From Octopus sinensis (taxonomy: Eukaryota), in contig NC_043003.1 in NCBI RefSeq assembly GCF_006345805.1, positions 17,980,001 through 18,044,000 on the forward strand: DNA of 64,000 nucleotides, in the 5' to 3' direction. Numbering within the stretch: position 1 is the stretch's first letter; every line of letters starts with the position of its first letter. Of the stretch, positions 2,490 to 53,161 are shown piece by piece. The notes under the pieces were generated by a model, which had not been told where the DNA came from, did no database searches, and was given only the letters and a program-made list of their open reading frames with translations. The position numbers and the translations under genes are program-made.

Positions 2490-2990
2490 GATTACCCTCG
2501 CGTATGTGTATTCTTCTTTGAAATATTTGAGTGTAAAATATTGTTTGTGTATGCAGGGAGAGAAGGTCTCATCTCTAATGTTTTGGATGTTACTGATGCT
2601 TGTATAAGGTTTAATTTTTCAGTAATACAGAGTTCACATTTTGTACCCAGTTTTCTGTATATTTTAGCTTCAGCAATAATTTCCCATTCTATCTGGGGTC
2701 TGCTTATTCCACTTTTTGTCAATGTCCATATCGTATTTGACATGGATGTAGTATGTTTTATGACATTTGTCTCTGAATGACGCCAGATGTGTATACATTT
2801 CCTTGAACGAGCTGACCGTCATTCCGATATGCGTCTCTGCCATTCCGCTGGGGTTCGTATATAGCAAATGCTATATACAGACACAAACTGTGAGTCGATA
2901 GCCAGCTAGAAAAGATGTTTTCCTGGGGCTGAAGCAACAGTAACATCGTCATTTATAGGACTGTGCCACGTTATGTTGGCATATAAACAT
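2490..2990 (-). mobile_element. Penelope-like element fragment (GIY-YIG C-terminal half)
   Basis: ORFs 2670-2867 (ETHIGMTVSSFKE...HLASF) and 2492-2743 (IW.L......IEWEIIAEAKIY...KCELCITEK) show the PLE endonuclease pattern. Abuts (TA)n at about 2995. Confidence 0.75.
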
Positions 2991-3028
<38 letters not shown>

Positions 3029-3070
3029 GAATAGGTAAATAAATGGAGTTAAACGAAGATATTATTAAAA

Positions 3071-3165
3071 TTCTTTTACTTTCGACATATGTTTCGAAGA
3101 CAATATGGTTTTATTCCAAAGGAATAAACGGTGTAAGATGCAATCTTCTCATCAGGAAAGAAAGA
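3071..3165 (-). ncRNA. Type I hammerhead ribozyme motif with intact core
   Basis: Minus strand reads CTTTC-CTGATGA-GAAGAT...TTATTCC ttt GGAATAA...GTCTTC-GAAA-C atat G-TC-GAAAG. All core nucleotides are present; predicted cleavage between 3084 and 3083. Confidence 0.85.
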
Positions 3166-3535
3166 GAGCCTCTCTCAACAACAAGACATTATAACAATTA
3201 CGATGTCTGCCTACATGATAAACAGAACGATATATATTCTGCCAGTCCATTGCCTTCGTAATGATGATAGCAATGCTTTTTACTATGGGCACAAGATCTG
3301 AAATTTGTGGGAGAGGGCTCGTCGATTATGTAGACACCAATACTCGACCCCGAAAGAACGAAAGGCAAAATCGACCTCAGCAGAATTTGAACTTGAAAAA
3401 CATGAAGCCGGTAGAAATGCCGCTAAGTATTTTTTTTTCGGCATGTTAACAATTCTTATTTCACACACCAACTTTCTCACCTATATATATATATATATAT
3501 ATATATAATATGATATGATATATATATATATATAT

Positions 3536-8909: not shown

Positions 8910-9009
8910 NNNNNNNNNNNNNNNNNNNNNNNNNNNNNNNNNNNNNNNNNNNNNNNNNNNNNNNNNNNNNNNNNNNNNNNNNNNNNNNNNNNNNNNNNNN
9001 NNNNNNNNN
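8910..9009. other. Assembly gap (100 N)
   Basis: Run of N; true size and contiguity across it are unknown. Confidence 1.
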
Positions 9010-16818: not shown

Positions 16819-17620
16819 TTTATGTAATATATAATCAACTGTAACGTTAGCGGTTCGGCAAAGAAACCGATCGAATAGTGCTAGGCTTACAAAGAGTAAG
16901 TCTTGGGGCTGGTTTCTTTGACTAAACCCGGTTAAATGATTGGATAAAAGAATAAAATATCTATGTAGGTGTGTGTGTATGTATGTATCGGAAGACACCT
17001 GTTGTTATGTCCTGTTATTATATTTTTTATTGTATTTGTTTTTATTGTATTTATATTTGTGTAACTTTGTCCGTTTTTCCGTCCTTGTTTTTGTATAGAT
17101 TCGCTGCTTTCTTCCAAGGAATCTAATGCTCTTAGCTTAGTTTGTCCTTGTGGCGAACGTTGCATTGACTATGTTTTAGCTTCGTCACTACAGGAACTGA
17201 CCGTGTTCTTATAGTGTGGGGAGGGGGGGGCAACAATTCATTTGTAAAGATTTTTATAATAAATGCATGTATTGCATCATTTATACACCCACAAGTTAAC
17301 TATGCTTATGCCTCTACTTGTTTTGTTATTCAAAATGTTTTTCACAACCACATTGTTCCGTGATCAGTACCACTGCGCGACAGCTTACGTAAGTGTCTTC
17401 TACTATGGCCTGGGGTCGACCGAAGCCTTGTGAATGCATATAGTAGGCGGAAACTGAAAGAAGCACCTCGTATGTGTGTCTGTGCATTATATAATCACTC
17501 ATATACACATATACATACAAACATACCTACATTCATTCACAAAGTAGTATGTATACACACACACATATATATATATACATATATGAATAAAAATGGAGTT
17601 AACGCAGGTTTAAACAAGTA

Positions 17621-17716
17621 TTTTTACTTTCTACATATGTTTCAAAAATTCCACTGATACTTATTCAAAAGAATAAAGGTATAAACAATGCAATCTTCTC
17701 TTCGGGAAAGTGAAAA
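17621..17716 (-). ncRNA. Degenerate hammerhead ribozyme, same family as 3071 and 42867
   Basis: CTTTC-CCGAAGA (U4>C)-GAAGAT...ATTTTT (G.U-rich stem II)-GAAA-C atat G-TA-GAAAG. Confidence 0.6.
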
Positions 17717-17899
17717 AACGAAACTTGTCAATACGACATTTTAGCAAAAAATGATGGATTCGTATAGCGATAGACAGAACGCTATTAATATTGTTTAAAA
17801 AAACGTTATATGATATAACGTCATAAGTAGCTTGTGAGATTTTTGCTGCCCTGGTAACTATTCATTCATTTATCCGTGTTAATTGTTAACAAGGTAAAT

Positions 17900-19074
<1,175 letters not shown>

Positions 19075-40812: not shown

Positions 40813-41102
40813 TTTAGCCCTACTGCTATTTAGCCCTAGGAAGCAGCAACGCTTCCTGTCGGCTTTGACACATTTCCCTGTGTCTTTAAGTTTGCAAGGG
40901 GGAGATGAGCACCTCCACCCAGCTAAGCCTGCACCCAGAGACTAGTTTCTAGTGAATGTATTTCTCTAGAATTCTTATAGTTAGATAGGCATCTCCAACT
41001 ATCAGGCTATGCTACCCCAGACACATAATTCCCGCCTCAGAAGAGAAATCAAATATCAGGAATATAAAATAAAGACCAATCGTTATTTATTTTCTAACTA
41101 AA

Positions 41103-41104
<2 letters not shown>

Positions 41105-41145
<41 letters not shown>

Positions 41146-41762
41146 CCGTGTGTGTGTGTGCATGTGCGTGTGTGTGTATGTGCATGTGTGTGTGTATGTG
41201 CGCGCGTGTGTGTATGTGCGTGTGTGTGTATGTGCGTGTGTTAGAAGGGAGTAGTAGTCATTTACTTTGATTTCTAAATAGAAGCATATGGGAAATAACA
41301 CTTACTGACCAGAGACAAAAAAATAACTTTGTTACACAGTGTAGTAAATGTTCTATGAAGTGTGCGTGTGTGTGTGTGTATGTGCGCGCGTGTGTGTGTA
41401 TGGGCGTGTGTGCGTGTGTGTGTGTGTGTGTGCATTTGTGTGTATGCGCGTGTGTGTGTGTATGTGCGTGTGTGTGTATGTGCATGTGTGCGTGTGCGCG
41501 TGTGTGTGTACGTGCACGTGCGTGTGTGTGTTTGTGCGTGTGTGTGTGGGTGTATGTGCGCGTGTGTGTGTATGTGCGTGTGTGTGTGTATGTGCGTGTG
41601 TGTGTGTATGTGCGTGTGTGTGTGTATGTGCGTGTGTGTGTGTATTTGCGTGTGTGTGTGTATTTGCGAGTGTGTGTGTATGTGCGTGTGTGTGTGTGCA
41701 TGTGCGTGTGTGTGTGTATGTGCGTGTGTGTGTGTGTATGTGCGTGTGTGTGTGTGTGTGTT
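41105..41762. repeat. Compound (GT)n/(GC)n microsatellite ending about 50 nt upstream of exon 3 (similar tract at 36370-36890)
   Basis: Direct reading. Confidence 0.97.
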
Positions 41763-41811
41763 TACTTACTCATCGTCTACTAAAACAATTTTTCTTCATT
41801 ATTCATTACAG

Positions 41812-42321
41812 ACAGTCAATGCAACCAATATAAGACATATCAGCCACCACATCATTATCATCTACAACAGCAACAACAACAACAACAGCCGCAACAGCGA
41901 CAGCAACATCAGCAACAACACCATCATCATCATCACCAACATCAGCAGCAGCAGCAACAGCAGCAGCAACAGTCACAGCAGCAGCAGCCACGACAACAAC
42001 CATATGTACACGAGTCCTACCCACAACTGTTACTACATAATCAACCGCAACAGCAGCAACAACAACAACAACAAACACAGTTGCAACAACTACCACATCA
42101 ACAACAACTACAACGTCAGCACCAACAGTTAGACGAATTCATACCAAACCATTCCAATACGACGCTTATTAGTTCTGATATGAACCCCTTCTCTTCGTCC
42201 CCGTCGTTGCCATACTACTACCCATCGTCTCAGTTGAAACAAAAGAAGCGCCCGGGAAGGCCAAAAATGAACAATCTTTTCAATGACAAAAATATGAAGA
42301 GTGGAAACTGTAAAAAGCGAG
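41812..42321 (+). CDS. EHF: ETS factor exon 3, polyQ/polyH low-complexity region plus KKRPGRPK basic (AT-hook-like/NLS) motif
   Basis: Acceptor TTACAG at 41811; stop-free frame (H)[20 protein letters not shown]...[11 protein letters not shown]...CKKR; donor G|GTAAGA at 42321/42322. Phase 1 at both ends joins exons 2 and 4 in frame. Confidence 0.88.
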
Positions 42322-42866
42322 GTAAGAATTTCCCTTCTTTTGCTTTGATCTTTAACAGCCAAACAAGACCACCACTCTCAAGAAGCTTTCTCCTACTACG
42401 TGGCATCTTGGACAAGTGCCTTCTACTGCTGCCTCGGGTCAATCAATGCCTTAGGTATGAATTTCACAAATGCAGACTGTGTGTAACCCTGACGTATATA
42501 TATATATATATATTTGAGTAGTTGAATGAATTATCTTGTTATGGATAATTCGGTTAACCGATACCTGGGTAGCAAATTCACATCAGAGAAGACACGTTTG
42601 AAGTTACGTGCTTTCGTGTGGAAATTTGTATGTTTTTTTTAAAATATAAATATATGTGAGAATGGAGTTGAACGACGAATTAACAAAAAACTTTAAGATG
42701 ACTGCTCACACGGAGCCCATAGTGAAAATGAGTGTCTCTTTAAAAAATTCCTTTATAAGGAGTGACGTCAAAATGGTTGGATGTAGAAGAATCTAGAAGG
42801 TTCTAAGGGTTCAAAGGTTCAAACGAAGTAGGAGAAGAGAGGTATAAGAATAGGAAGGTGTTTTTG

Positions 42867-42965
42867 TTCCTTGCTTTTCCTGATGAGAAAGCGGCATAAT
42901 ATACTCCTTATTCCTTCGCAATTAGGAATATGCAGCCTTCGAAACACATGTCGAAAATAAAGGAA
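42867..42965 (+). ncRNA. Type I hammerhead ribozyme motif with intact core
   Basis: Stem I TTTTC 42875-79/GAAAA 42953-57, extended by TTCCTT/AAGGAA. Core CTGATGA 42880-86. Stem II GAAAGCGGCATA/TATGCAGCCTTC (10 of 12 pairs, G10.1-C11.1). GAAA 42941-44; stem III C-ACAT-G; GTC cleavage triplet ending at 42952. Confidence 0.85.
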
Positions 42966-43004
42966 TTTTGTTAATTCGTCGTTCAACTCCATTCTCTCAT
43001 ATAT

Positions 43005-43106
<102 letters not shown>

Positions 43107-49558: not shown

Positions 49559-49751
49559 TGAAGAATCAGTTACTGTGGGAATTCCTGTATGATGCACTGA
49601 AAAACCCTGGTTACAATCCACGATTCCTAAAATGGGAAAACGAAGTGGAAGGAATCTTTCGATTTGTCCAATCAGAAATGATGGCTAATGTTTGGGGAGA
49701 ACTGAAGAACAATGATAACATGAACTACGAAAAACTCAGCAGAGCTATGAG
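49559..49751 (+). CDS. EHF: ETS factor exon 4, N-terminal part of the ETS DNA-binding domain
   Basis: Translates as (V)KNQLLWEFLYDALKNPGYNPRFLKWENEVEGIFRFVQSEMMANVWGELKNNDNMNYEKLSRAMR, with the three conserved Trp and the YEKLSRAMR recognition helix. Acceptor TTTCAG at 49558; phase-2 donor AG|GT at 49751/49752. Confidence 0.96.
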
Positions 49752-49761
49752 GTGTGTAATG

Positions 49762-52774: not shown

Positions 52775-53058
52775 GACAGGCTTCTTTCAGTTTCCGTCTA
52801 CTAAATATACGCACAAGGCTTTGGTCGGCCCGGGGCTATAGTAAAATACATTTGCTTAAGGGTGCTACGCAGTGGGACTGATCCCGGGATTATGAGGTTG
52901 GGAAGCAACCTTCTTACCACACAGCCACGCTTCTTCATTATCATTTAACCTGCAAATGTATAAGGAATAATTATTTAAACTTCATAATCAGTTAATTTAT
53001 TAAACACCTATATAACCCATTGTTAACGTTTACTTGCTTTTTTTTTTTTTTCGTATAG

Positions 53059-53161
53059 GCATTACTATCGCCGAGGGATCTTGGAGAGAGTAGAAGGCAG
53101 GCGCTTGGTATATAAATTCTCAAGAAACGCAATAGAAAAATTGAAATTACGCTCAAAATAG
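53059..53161 (+). CDS. EHF: ETS factor exon 5, C-terminal part of the ETS domain and stop codon
   Basis: Acceptor after poly-T...TATAG at 53058. AG+G completes Arg, then HYYRRGILERVEGRRLVYKFSRNAIEKLKLRSK* with TAG at 53159-53161. Missing from the supplied ORF track because it is too short. Confidence 0.95.

What the first reader, a model, noticed from the sequence alone, without database searches (positions are those of the whole stretch)
42651..43003. Intact hammerhead ribozyme in sense orientation inside intron 3 of the ETS gene
SEEN: every catalytic nucleotide is present (CUGAUGA 42880-86, G10.1-C11.1, GAAA 42941-44, GUC ending at 42952), with an 11-bp interrupted stem I and a 12-bp stem II. 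It lies about 560 nt after the exon 3 donor. The element is framed by 38-bp inverted repeats (42651-42688/42966-43003, one mismatch) and abuts (TA)n. Stem III is minimal with palindromic ACAUGU. KNOWN: such minimal stem III hammerheads cleave weakly as monomers and can be activated by dimerisation; intronic hammerheads are known in amniotes. INFERENCE: if active, it would cut the nascent ETS pre-mRNA and could influence splicing or transcript output.
Basis: partly seen in the sequence, partly recalled or inferred. Interest (0 to 1): 0.88.

Follow-up and report, generated by a model that had tools for sequence, protein, structure and literature searches.

The report
Retrotransposon-borne hammerhead ribozyme in ETS intron
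The hammerhead ribozyme motif is real, but it is one of thousands of copies carried in the tail of an abundant octopus Penelope-like retrotransposon, and it landed in this ETS intron as a truncated fragment, so it is most likely a passenger and not a regulator of the gene.

Summary
All hammerhead core nucleotides, the three helices and the 40-nt inverted repeat are at the stated coordinates. The motif lies on the sense strand 558 nt after a GAG|GTAAGA donor of an Ets-domain gene.

It is not chance. A descriptor scan found 2 hits in the window and 0 in 300 simulated 64-kb sequences. Rfam Hammerhead_1 scores it 25.4 bits, below the cut-off of 34, because helix II carries a 50-nt insertion. Six diverged subfamilies of the same repeat keep the core; one single copy has U4 changed to C. 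Helices I and II covary (8 of 20 pairs change on both sides).

It is not specific to the ETS gene. The motif lies in the 3' UTR of a roughly 3.4-kb retrotransposon encoding a reverse transcriptase plus GIY-YIG endonuclease. Its protein motifs and (TA)n insertion preference match the published Hydra clade of Penelope-like elements. The genome holds thousands of copies.

The window locus is two 5'-truncated copies lying head to head between (TA)n tracts. The "framing" inverted repeat is the segment they share, and the minus-strand copy has lost its ribozyme.

Helix III is minimal, there is no sense-strand partner in the window, and a strong competing hairpin is predicted. Efficient cleavage of ETS pre-mRNA is therefore unlikely and remains untested.

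The parts
42866..42966 (+). Type I hammerhead ribozyme motif, complete (stem I, core, helix II, helix III, cleavage site)
   Evidence: Sequence; RF00163 25.4 bits over 42874-42958; descriptor hit; covariation across subfamilies
42866..42879 (+). Stem I, 5' strand (GUUCCUUGCUUUUC)
   Evidence: Pairs with 42953-42966 as 5 bp, a 2x2 loop, then 6-7 bp
42880..42886 (+). Core box C3-A9 (CUGAUGA)
   Evidence: Among subfamilies A, B, C, D and F only N7 varies (U or A). The E copy also has U4 changed to C
42887..42940 (+). Helix II, 54 nt: G10.1...C11.1, proximal helix with 10 of 12 positions paired, plus a distal 7-bp hairpin (UAUUCCU/AGGAAUA)
   Evidence: Seven of its 12 proximal pairs change on both sides between subfamilies
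42941..42944 (+). Core G12 A13 A14 A15.1 (GAAA)
   Evidence: invariant in all subfamilies
42944..42951 (+). Minimal helix III: A15.1-U16.1 and C15.2-G16.2 capped by tetraloop ACAU (family consensus AUAU)
   Evidence: The T-to-C change at 42947 breaks the consensus 8-nt palindrome ACAUAUGU
42952..42953 (+). Predicted self-cleavage site, after C17 (GUC|G)
   Evidence: Position inferred from the hammerhead numbering. No cleavage data
42953..42966 (+). Stem I, 3' strand (GAAAAUAAAGGAAU)
42866..43016 (+). 5'-truncated copy of the subfamily A retrotransposon 3' UTR (consensus positions 642-791, 98% identity): hammerhead plus 40-nt terminal segment 'a', ending in (TA)n
   Evidence: blastn against the family consensus
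42683..42860 (-). Second, inverted 5'-truncated copy, part 1 (consensus 444-621, 97%)
42495..42688 (-). Inverted copy, part 2 (consensus 742-935, 97%): segment 'a' plus the ~135-nt tail X'. A 120-nt internal deletion (consensus 622-741) has removed this copy's hammerhead
42649..42688 (.). Left arm of the 40-nt inverted repeat, which is segment 'a' of the minus-strand copy
42966..43005 (.). Right arm of the inverted repeat, which is segment 'a' of the plus-strand copy
42492..42515 (.). (TA)n tract at the 3' end of the minus-strand copy
43004..43102 (.). (TA)n tract at the 3' end of the plus-strand copy
   Evidence: Family copies end in (TA)n
42829..42882 (+). Predicted competing hairpin in the sense transcript. 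It pairs the end of the inverted copy with stem I 5' strand and the first three bases of the CUGA box
   Evidence: MFE -22.7 kcal/mol, z -4.4, 0 of 200 shuffles as stable
42321..42322 (+). Exon/intron boundary (GAG|GTAAGA donor) of the Ets-domain gene, upstream of the insertion
49573..49752 (+). Ets-domain exon (first part), which fixes the gene strand
   Evidence: Pfam PF00178, 69.3 bits
53057..53119 (+). Ets-domain exon (last part)
   Evidence: tblastn. Pfam PF00178 gives 23.4 bits, below the 26.9 cut-off, for this 21-aa piece alone
3024..3233 (-). Related short (~205-nt) element of subfamily D with an intact hammerhead core, antisense to the ETS gene strand
   Evidence: nhmmer; descriptor hit; RF00163 18.8 bits; at least 2422 genomic candidates
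17576..17911 (-). Related diverged copy (subfamily E) with a broken core (CCGAAGA)

Best explanation
The motif is a genuine, evolutionarily maintained type I hammerhead ribozyme that belongs to a retrotransposon, not to the ETS gene.

What the element is (shown). The hammerhead sits on the sense strand of the 3' UTR of an abundant octopus Penelope-like element, about 60-190 nt from the element's 3' end. [quoted passage not shown] Its protein motifs and (TA)n insertion preference match the published Hydra clade.

How copies are laid down (shown). Copies are 5'-truncated and inserted in (TA)n microsatellites. An inverted 5'-truncated copy often abuts the 5' end.

What the window locus is (shown). 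It is such a compound insertion. A 151-nt plus-strand fragment (hammerhead plus terminal segment) lies head to head with a minus-strand copy, and that copy has lost its own hammerhead through a 120-nt deletion. The inverted repeat is the terminal segment shared by the two copies.

How the ribozyme works in the element (inferred from published work on the same class). The 2-bp helix III with a palindromic tetraloop is the form that is weak as a monomer. It becomes active when two copies extend helix III as a dimer, or when the element's own protein assists folding.

What it does in this intron (inferred). It is transcribed as a passenger of the ETS pre-mRNA. It has no sense-strand partner in the window, it carries a loop mutation that weakens dimer pairing, and a strong competing hairpin is predicted. 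Self-cleavage is therefore expected to be inefficient or absent, and an effect on ETS output is unlikely.
For: Core and helices:
- Core nucleotides and helices are at the stated coordinates.
- RF00163 gives a full-model alignment at 25.4 bits.
- The descriptor null gave 0 hits in 300 simulations against 2 real hits.

Repeat family:
- At least 1917 first-look candidates for subfamily A, 3195 for B, 2332 for C and 2422 for D.
- 26 of 33 sampled A arms and 25 of 35 B arms keep an intact descriptor.

Selection on the structure:
- Subfamilies A, B, C, D and F keep C3-A9, varying only at the free position N7, and all seven rows keep GAAA and helix III. The single copy E has U4 changed to C.
- In the 7-row alignment (six subfamilies, A twice) 87% of cells are paired, against 36-47% when partners are slid.
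- 8 of 20 pairs change on both sides. Covariation score is 0.279 against 0.168 for shuffles (0 of 500 reach it).

Locus anatomy:
- Mapping to the consensus.
- Typical family copies have no terminal inverted repeats.
- Head-to-head pairs recur in other loci.
- 3' ends abut (TA)n.
- Coverage falls off gradually towards the 5' end, as 5' truncation predicts.

Element identity:
- A full-length example, L084, has an 877-aa ORF followed by a 3' UTR with the hammerhead 60 nt from the (TA)n.
- That ORF aligns with P0160 at E 1e-67 through the YRDD box.
- The AF2 model of P0160 (pLDDT 82.7) matches reverse transcriptases, telomerase, LINE-1 and R2.
- For the model of the octopus C-terminal domain (pLDDT 85.3), five of the six best PDB matches are GIY-YIG nucleases: T4 EndoII, Hpy188I and I-TevI, with UvrC N-terminal domains next.
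- The protein family consensus shows RWK, DKT, CxCX5C, CxxC-E and N...CxH, as described for the Hydra clade, which is also reported to insert into (TA)n and to carry hammerheads (PMC8557442).

Literature on this ribozyme class:
- Weak as monomer, active as dimer (PMC4209133; PMC7229834).
- Protein-assisted and dispensable for insertion in vitro (PMC11167929).

Local context:
- No other sense-strand copy in the window.
- Competing hairpin of -22.7 kcal/mol. The whole-locus MFE structure pairs the inverted repeat and does not form the hammerhead.
Against: - No cleavage or RNA data exist for any copy.
- The motif is below Rfam's curated threshold.
- Subfamily C gets no Rfam hit.
- C, E and F have G10.1-U11.1 instead of G-C.
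- The hammerhead-constrained fold is 4-5 kcal/mol above the MFE in subfamilies A-D.
- C, D, E and F are each represented by a single copy, not a consensus.
- The GIY-YIG structural matches are weak statistically (best E 0.08).
- Hydra-clade placement rests on motifs, not a phylogeny.
- In this family the common compound form is inverted, not direct tandem. The usual cis-dimer activation route is therefore not evident.
- Structure predictions cannot exclude co-transcriptional folding of an active monomer, or trans-dimerisation with abundant element transcripts.
Confidence: 0.85

Rival explanations
1. Exapted cis-regulatory ribozyme. This intronic copy self-cleaves the nascent ETS pre-mRNA and tunes splicing or transcript output.
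For: - Intact core in sense orientation 558 nt into the intron.
- Heterodimer pairing with a consensus copy in trans would have 7 of 8 helix III pairs (my count on the sequences).
- Element transcripts could be abundant, given the thousands of copies.
Against: - The copy is 97-98% identical to the family consensus, like its neighbours, which points to a recent neutral insertion.
- It is one of thousands.
- No cis partner in the window.
- The loop mutation weakens dimerisation.
- A competing hairpin and 40-bp inverted-repeat pairing are predicted.
- Hammerheads of this class are weak in vitro and protein-assisted.
- Vertebrate hammerhead repeats are reported as depleted from introns (abstract of 10.64898/2026.07.22.740005). 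That argues such insertions are tolerated or selected against, not recruited.
Confidence: 0.05
2. The conserved hammerhead-shaped RNA is maintained in the retrotransposon for a non-catalytic role, for example as a binding or positioning platform for the element's RT-endonuclease near the reverse-transcription start. Self-cleavage would then be negligible in vivo for all copies.
For: - In an Anolis Poseidon element, hammerhead mutants did not affect insertion in vitro, and no RNA-seq reads ended at the cleavage site (PMC11167929).
- Low in-vitro activity of Penelope-like-element hammerheads (PMC4209133).
- G-U at 10.1-11.1 in three subfamilies.
- No sampled truncated copy starts exactly at the cleavage site.
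Against: The positions that stay invariant are exactly the catalytic core, including unpaired nucleotides with no role in a simple hairpin platform. The only variable box position in five of the six subfamilies is N7. That pattern is most simply explained by selection for catalysis.
Confidence: 0.2
3. The element is a miniature inverted-repeat DNA transposon (MITE) bounded by 38-40-nt terminal inverted repeats that happens to carry a hammerhead.
For: - 40-nt, 98% inverted repeat flanking 277 nt, with TA-rich flanks.
- Some other loci also show inverted arms.
Against: - Typical family copies have a single arm and no terminal inverted repeats.
- The repeat extends 150 nt beyond the left arm in the window.
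- The arms map to the same 3'-terminal consensus segment of two oppositely oriented, differently truncated copies.
- Long copies carry an RT-endonuclease ORF and show graded 5' truncation.
Confidence: 0.01
4. Chance occurrence of the hammerhead consensus in AT-rich intronic sequence.
For: - The MFE fold of the isolated segment is not the hammerhead and is not unusually stable (z -1.7).
- No Rfam hit at the gathering threshold.
Against: - 0 of 300 simulated windows contain a descriptor match.
- The motif is the family consensus and is retained with covariation in six diverged subfamilies.
Confidence: 0.01

Closest known systems
Hammerhead ribozymes of Penelope-like elements, specifically the Hydra clade of C-terminal-endonuclease elements (Craig, Yushenova, Rodriguez & Arkhipova 2021, PMC8557442; Cervera & de la Pena 2014, PMC4209133)
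   Same: - Single RT + GIY-YIG ORF in a short element (about 3.4 kb here, against under 3 kb reported).
- RWK, DKT, CxCX5C, CxxC and CxH motifs in the protein family.
- Insertion into (TA)n.
- 5' truncation and an inverted 5'-truncated copy at the 5' end.
- Type I hammerhead near the 3' end with a tiny palindromic helix III.
   Different: - Helix II is 53-55 nt (a 12-position imperfect stem plus a distal hairpin) instead of 4-8 bp, so Rfam scores it below threshold.
- Direct pseudo-LTR tandems were not seen in my sample. Inverted pairs dominate.
- An optional tail of about 135 nt, against the 30-40 nt reported.
- The linker cysteines are degenerate in the subfamily A ORF.
- The clade was reported in molluscs only as 'a small number of families'. 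Here the population is very large (at least 12,641 first-look ORF candidates).
Amphibian satellite / axolotl HHR_Amex1 and Schistosoma type I hammerheads; metazoan non-LTR retrozymes (Cervera & de la Pena 2020, PMC7229834)
   Same: - Type I topology.
- Helix III of one base pair beyond A15.1-U16.1, capped by a palindromic tetraloop.
- Expected dependence on dimerisation.
- Residence in AT-rich, high-copy, non-autonomous or truncated retroelement copies.
   Different: - Retrozymes are head-to-tail tandem repeats of 170-400 nt expressed as circular RNAs. The copies sampled here are dispersed or inverted, not tandem.
- No canonical loop 1/loop 2 tertiary contact motif is recognisable, because helix II is long.
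- A separate, canonical short hammerhead in a 431-nt tandem does exist elsewhere in this genome.
Conserved intronic hammerheads of amniotes (Rfam HH9, HH10)
   Same: Hammerhead located in sense orientation inside an intron of a protein-coding gene.
   Different: - Those are single-copy, orthologously conserved elements with stable helices. This one is a recent copy of a multi-thousand-copy transposon.
- No Rfam match to HH9 or HH10.

Membership tests
Hammerhead ribozyme, type I | Conserved catalytic core: C3 U4 G5 A6 N7 G8 A9, G12 A13 A14, A15.1-U16.1, H17 not G | tested here: met
   All present at 42880-42886, 42941-42944 and 42951-42952. Invariant in subfamilies A, B, C, D and F except N7. 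The E copy has U4 changed to C
Hammerhead ribozyme, type I | Three helices around the core with helix I open-ended, and G10.1-C11.1 closing helix II | tested here: met
   Helix I is 5 + 6 bp, helix II is 54 nt, helix III is 2 bp plus a tetraloop. G-C in A, B and D; G-U in C, E and F
Hammerhead ribozyme, type I | Helices supported by compensatory change in relatives | tested here: met
   8 of 20 pairs change on both sides. 87% of cells are paired, against 36-47% when partners are slid. 0 of 500 shuffles reach the covariation score. Helix III never varies, so it says nothing either way
Hammerhead ribozyme, type I | Score at or above the Rfam RF00163 gathering threshold (34 bits) | tested here: not met
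   25.4 bits for the window copy, 18.8 bits for D, no hit for C. The window-copy alignment spans a 50-nt insertion in helix II
Hammerhead ribozyme, type I | Mg2+-dependent self-cleavage 3' of H17, giving 2',3'-cyclic phosphate and 5'-OH ends | not testable with these tools
   No RNA or biochemical data available
Hammerhead ribozyme, type I | Tertiary contact between helix I loop or bulge and helix II loop | not tested
   An internal loop in helix I is present in all subfamilies, but no recognisable canonical loop-loop motif. No 3D modelling was done
Penelope-like element, Hydra clade | [quoted passage not shown] | tested here: met
   - 877-aa ORF in L084 aligned to P0160.
- RT fold for the N-terminal ~400 aa.
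- For the C-terminal domain, five of the six best PDB matches are GIY-YIG nucleases, though E is 0.08 or worse.
- GIY / YIG / R / H / E / N motif pattern
Penelope-like element, Hydra clade | Clade motifs: RWK, DKT instead of DKG, CxCX5C linker, CxxC and CxH around the conserved E and N | tested here: met
   All are present in the consensus of the protein family to which the octopus ORF belongs, compared with the description in PMC8557442. In octopus copies, DKT is present in L084, CxxC-E and CxH are present in L003, and the linker cysteines are degenerate in L003
Penelope-like element, Hydra clade | Absence of the CCHH zinc-finger motif in the endonuclease domain | not tested
   I did not examine the endonuclease alignment for this motif
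Penelope-like element, Hydra clade | Phylogenetic placement of the RT within the Hydra clade | not tested
Penelope-like element, Hydra clade | Insertion architecture: 5' truncation, adjacent inverted 5'-truncated copy, microsatellite (TA)n targets, hammerhead near the 3' end | tested here: met
   Direct pseudo-LTR tandems were not observed in the roughly 80 loci examined
Metazoan non-LTR retrozyme | Head-to-tail tandem repeats of 170-400 nt, each with a hammerhead | tested here: not met
   No same-strand tandem pairs among the sampled A-F copies. The only tandem hammerheads found belong to a different, canonical motif (L046/L047)
Metazoan non-LTR retrozyme | Expression as small circular RNAs | not testable with these tools
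   No transcriptome access
MITE / DNA transposon with terminal inverted repeats | Terminal inverted repeats at both ends in family members | tested here: not met
   Typical copies have no terminal inverted repeats. The window's arms are one consensus segment in two inverted copies
Conserved amniote-type intronic hammerhead (HH9/HH10) | Single-copy, orthologously conserved intronic element matching those Rfam models | tested here: not met
   Multi-thousand-copy repeat. No HH9 or HH10 hit. Orthology could not be tested

The most novel reading that the evidence does not exclude
The long-helix-II hammerhead may be catalytically competent when assisted by the element's protein or by trans-dimerisation with abundant element RNA. 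If so, the thousands of sense-oriented intronic copies in the octopus genome, this ETS intron included, would make host pre-mRNAs conditionally cleavable whenever the retrotransposon is expressed. That would be a genome-wide, transposon-driven layer of transcript attenuation.
Probability: 0.05. Interest if true: 0.7.

Novelty: new member of a known kind. Interest (0 to 1): 0.3.

Why it matters
For the ETS gene it probably does not matter. The ribozyme is a recent transposon passenger.

For ribozyme and transposon biology the value is modest but real:
- Octopus carries a very large, young population of Hydra-clade Penelope-like elements.
- Their hammerhead has an unusually long, covarying helix II that escapes Rfam's threshold, so standard annotation misses thousands of ribozyme motifs.
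- The six diverged subfamilies supply natural covariation data for a minimal-helix-III hammerhead.
- The dominance of inverted over tandem arrangements poses a concrete question about how such ribozymes are activated.

Tried and rejected
- **MITE reading.** My first reading suggested an 830-bp element with 140-nt terminal inverted repeats. I rejected it after typical copies showed no terminal inverted repeats and both window arms mapped to one consensus segment.
- **L008 as the canonical copy.** Its 5' part turned out to be inverted relative to the majority consensus.
- **Rfam at gathering and on 451 nt.** No hammerhead hit. The hit appeared only when 111 nt were searched.
- **MFE folding of the isolated motif.** It does not give the hammerhead. 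This is expected for a 2-bp helix III and is not decisive.
- **Truncated copies starting at the cleavage site.** L055, L080 and L081 start 3-7 nt upstream of it, so they give no support for cleavage.
- **The conserved tail motif GCTACCCAGGTATCGGTTA.** It is absent from the canonical-hammerhead loci and from the D, E and F copies.
- **Pfam scans of the octopus ORF and its homologues.** Nothing significant. The precomputed families PF26215 and PF28514 are not in the local library.
- **PDB sequence-profile search.** Nothing.
- **Word-based homologue search with the single octopus ORF.** It found only one Octopus sinensis uncharacterised protein.
- **Supplementary hammerhead tables of PMC8557442.** Not held.
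Full report
**1. The observation**

- CTGATGA at 42880-42886.
- A 54-nt helix II from G 42887 to C 42940.
- GAAA at 42941-42944.
- A two-base-pair helix III (A15.1-U16.1 and C15.2-G16.2) capped by ACAU.
- GUC ending at 42952.
- A stem I in which 42867-42879 pairs with 42953-42965 as 5 bp, a 2x2 internal loop, then 6 bp.

The inverted repeat is 40 nt and 98% complementary (42649-42688 / 42966-43005). (TA)n follows at 43004-43102.

The gene context also holds. Ets-domain exons lie on the + strand at 49573-49752 and 53057-53119. A polyQ-rich exon ends at a GAG|GTAAGA donor at 42321/42322. The motif therefore lies 558 nt into a plausible intron, in sense. I could not verify the exon numbering.

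**2. Is it more than chance?**

Rfam at its curated thresholds finds nothing in the window, nor in a 451-nt search at E up to 10. When only 111 nt are searched, Hammerhead_1 (RF00163) aligns 42874-42958 over the whole model at 25.4 bits, against a gathering score of 34, with E 1.3e-4. The alignment spans a 50-nt insertion in helix II.

I also wrote a hammerhead descriptor requiring:
- the CUGANGA box;
- a G-C closed helix II with at least 4 of its 5 proximal positions paired;
- GAAA;
- a short helix III, then U and H17;
- five contiguous stem I pairs.

It hits the window twice, at 42880 (+) and 3155 (-). It hit none of 300 simulated 64-kb sequences with the window's dinucleotide transitions.

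**3. It is a repeat, not a locus-specific element**

The window is G000:C7:17980001-18044000 of a 2.72-Gb genome. One encoded protein is identical to a place in this genome and close to an Octopus sinensis entry.

The 357-nt element has at least 1917 first-look candidates, and the scored ones are 94-99% identical. Typical copies carry only one copy of the hammerhead arm and have no terminal inverted repeats.

I mapped the window to a consensus built from 28 oriented copies. The result:
- On the minus strand, consensus 444-621 corresponds to 42860-42683, and consensus 742-935 to 42688-42495. This is a 5'-truncated copy in which a 120-nt deletion has removed its own hammerhead.
- On the plus strand, consensus 642-791 corresponds to 42866-43016. 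This is a second copy, truncated exactly at the start of stem I.

The two copies lie head to head, 5 nt apart, each ending in (TA)n. The "framing" inverted repeat is the 40-nt 3'-terminal segment that both copies contain.

The same head-to-head arrangement recurs in many other loci: L011, L018, L020, L060, L062, L067, L068, L073, L078 and L016.

**4. The hammerhead is selected in the family**

The subfamily A consensus (34 arms) has the same motif, but with loop AUAU. The window copy carries a T-to-C change at 42947. In the correct register the consensus A15.1-U16.1 stretch, ACAUAUGU, is a perfect 8-nt palindrome. The window's ACACAUGU would leave two central C x A mismatches in a homodimer.

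Searching outward gave more subfamilies:
- B: at least 3195 candidates.
- C: at least 2332 candidates.
- D: a short element of about 205 nt, at least 2422 candidates, one copy at window 3024-3233 on the minus strand.
- E: window 17576-17911, minus strand.
- F: in a full-length element, L084.

These candidate counts are first-look lower bounds and may overlap between subfamilies.

Across these subfamilies the arms diverge to roughly 65-83% identity. Even so, A, B, C, D and F keep CUGANGA with variation only at the free position N7. All seven rows keep GAAA, C-NNNN-G and UH. The single decayed copy E has U4 changed to C.

On a 7-row alignment with the hammerhead pairs imposed (the 6-row version is):
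- 87% of cells are standard pairs, against 36-47% when partners are slid by 1-3 columns.
- 8 of 20 pairs show changes on both sides. Examples are stem I position 5, U-A to C-G, and helix II positions 5, 6, 8 and 11.
- The covariation score is 0.279 against 0.168 for column shuffles, and 0 of 500 shuffles reach it.

In each subfamily the 53-55 nt between the two core boxes fold on their own into a hairpin. In four of the five it closes directly at the core.

About three quarters of sampled A and B copies retain an intact descriptor. The window copy is therefore one of thousands of intact motifs.

**5. What carries it**

Coverage of subfamily B loci falls gradually towards the 5' side and stops sharply at the 3' (TA)n. 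That is the signature of 5' truncation.

Longer A and B copies contain an ORF, and L003 holds an intact 329-aa frame. In L016 joined to L083, a 178-nt inverted copy of the hammerhead arm abuts the 5' end of a copy that is truncated inside this ORF.

The ORF has 2611 homologous cluster representatives. The longer ones (about 700 aa) carry these motifs:
- FDIxxFYPSI, MGSxDGAE and GLYRDDGL;
- FLDxTL, SNHPP and WFNPP;
- CNCRxxxxCPLxGxC;
- a VVYxAxV...YIGxT...R...H...E...N pattern.

Pfam and PDB sequence searches were blind to the family. Structure prediction was not:
- An AlphaFold2 model of P0160 (pLDDT 82.7) matches reverse transcriptases: DRT9, retron, G2L4, telomerase, LINE-1 and R2.
- For a model of the octopus C-terminal 131 aa (pLDDT 85.3), five of the six best PDB matches are GIY-YIG nucleases: T4 EndoII, Hpy188I and I-TevI, with UvrC N-terminal domains next. 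The E-values are weak, 0.08 at best.

The genome has at least 12,641 first-look candidates for this ORF, many with open frames of 850-914 aa.

One full-length example is L084. Its layout is:
- (TA)n;
- an ORF of about 877 aa, E 1e-67 to P0160 across the RT;
- a 3' UTR of about 760 nt, with the hammerhead on the sense strand 60 nt from the end;
- (TA)n.

**6. Comparison with what is known**

Craig et al. 2021 (PMC8557442) describe the insertion hallmarks of Penelope-like elements:
- 5' truncation;
- partial tandems;
- an optional tail;
- microsatellite targets.

They also define a Hydra clade of short C-terminal-endonuclease elements. Its features are an RWK motif, DKT instead of DKG, a CxCX5C linker, CxxC and CxH around the conserved E and N, insertion into (TA)n, and readily detected hammerheads. 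They found it in Cnidaria, Mollusca, Echinodermata, Arthropoda and a hemichordate.

Every one of those protein motifs is in the family consensus, and the architecture matches. I did not run an RT phylogeny, so clade placement rests on motifs.

The ribozyme type is the one described for amphibian satellites, Schistosoma and Penelope-like elements: helix III of one pair beyond 15.1-16.1, capped by a palindromic tetraloop. It is weak or inactive as a monomer and active as a dimer (PMC4209133; PMC7229834).

In an Anolis Poseidon element the hammerhead was protein-assisted and dispensable for insertion in vitro. No RNA-seq reads ended at its cleavage site. Two internal reverse-transcription start sites explained the optional tail (PMC11167929). 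This last point offers an explanation for why about half of the A copies end after segment 'a' and half after the ~135-nt tail X'.

What differs here:
- the very long helix II;
- the sub-threshold Rfam score;
- the dominance of inverted over direct compound insertions;
- the size of the octopus population.

The genome also holds canonical short type I hammerheads. The best RF00163 hit is 48.2 bits, and one pair lies 431 nt apart in tandem. These are a separate family.

**7. What it does in this intron**

Shown:
- There is no second sense-strand copy in the 64-kb window.
- The neighbouring copy is antisense and has lost its hammerhead.
- The loop mutation weakens dimer pairing.

Predicted:
- In the sense transcript the end of the inverted copy pairs with stem I 5' strand and the first three bases of the CUGA box (42829-42882, -22.7 kcal/mol, z -4.4).
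- The whole 364-nt locus folds into a hairpin closed by the 40-bp inverted repeat, without forming the hammerhead (-126 kcal/mol, z -9.4).
- The hammerhead-constrained fold is 4 kcal/mol above the MFE.

Inferred: efficient self-cleavage of ETS pre-mRNA is unlikely. It cannot be excluded without RNA data, because trans-dimerisation or protein assistance is conceivable.

**8. Verdict**

Its correct description is [quoted passage not shown]. It is a new member of a known kind with an unusual helix II. The regulatory reading for ETS is unsupported.

**Caveats**
- Copy numbers are lower bounds from a capped search.
- Subfamilies C-F rest on single copies.
- No experiment or transcriptome was available.

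Noticed in passing
window 3024-3233 (-): A short (~205-nt) hammerhead-bearing element of a diverged subfamily (D) with an intact core. It lies between long (TA)n tracts, and the genome has at least 2422 candidates for it. It looks like a SINE-sized non-autonomous derivative of the same retrotransposon tail.
   Followed up: partly
window 17576-17911 (-): Another diverged copy (E) with a broken core (CCGAAGA) but well-paired helices I and II. Its 5' part resembles the tail X in inverted orientation.
   Followed up: partly
window 2597-2858 (-): Weak tblastn similarity to the GIY-YIG region (aa 550-636) of the retrotransposon protein family. This is a coding remnant of another Penelope-like element next to the D copy.
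   Followed up: no
window 42645-43008 (+): As sense RNA the compound insertion is predicted to form a long hairpin closed by the 40-bp inverted repeat (MFE -126 kcal/mol, z -9.4). This is a candidate double-stranded RNA, and so a possible A-to-I editing substrate, inside the ETS intron.
   Followed up: partly
L046/L047 (G000:C16:25146363 and 25146794); L041 (G000:C13:29988995): The genome also contains canonical short type I hammerheads above the Rfam cut-off (best 48.2 bits). They have the same C-AUGU-G helix III. Two lie 431 nt apart on one strand, which looks like a tandem retrozyme-like repeat distinct from the family studied.
   Followed up: partly
G000 genome-wide; example L084 (G000:C7:86594300-86599800, element on - strand): At least 12,641 first-look candidates for the RT-endonuclease ORF, many with uninterrupted frames of 850-914 aa. 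This suggests a very large and apparently young Hydra-clade Penelope-like element population in this octopus.
   Followed up: partly
window 42395-42455 (+) and 18150-18280 (-): Fragments of a SINE-like repeat (…GGCAYCTTGGRCAAGTGYCTTCTACT…CCTCGGG…) lie next to the (TA)n tracts that host the hammerhead elements.
   Followed up: no
window 8910-9009: A run of 100 N, which is an assembly gap.
   Followed up: no
window 41100-41780 and 41784-42321 (+): A long (CA/TG)n-rich tract, followed by a polyQ-rich coding exon (…KKRPGRPK…) that ends at the donor upstream of the insertion.
   Followed up: no
protein family of L003:134-1120 / P0160: A protein family with 2611 cluster representatives gets no hit in the local Pfam-A copy. 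Precomputed labels PF26215 and PF28514 exist for homologues but could not be resolved here. Only structure prediction showed the reverse transcriptase and GIY-YIG folds.
   Followed up: yes
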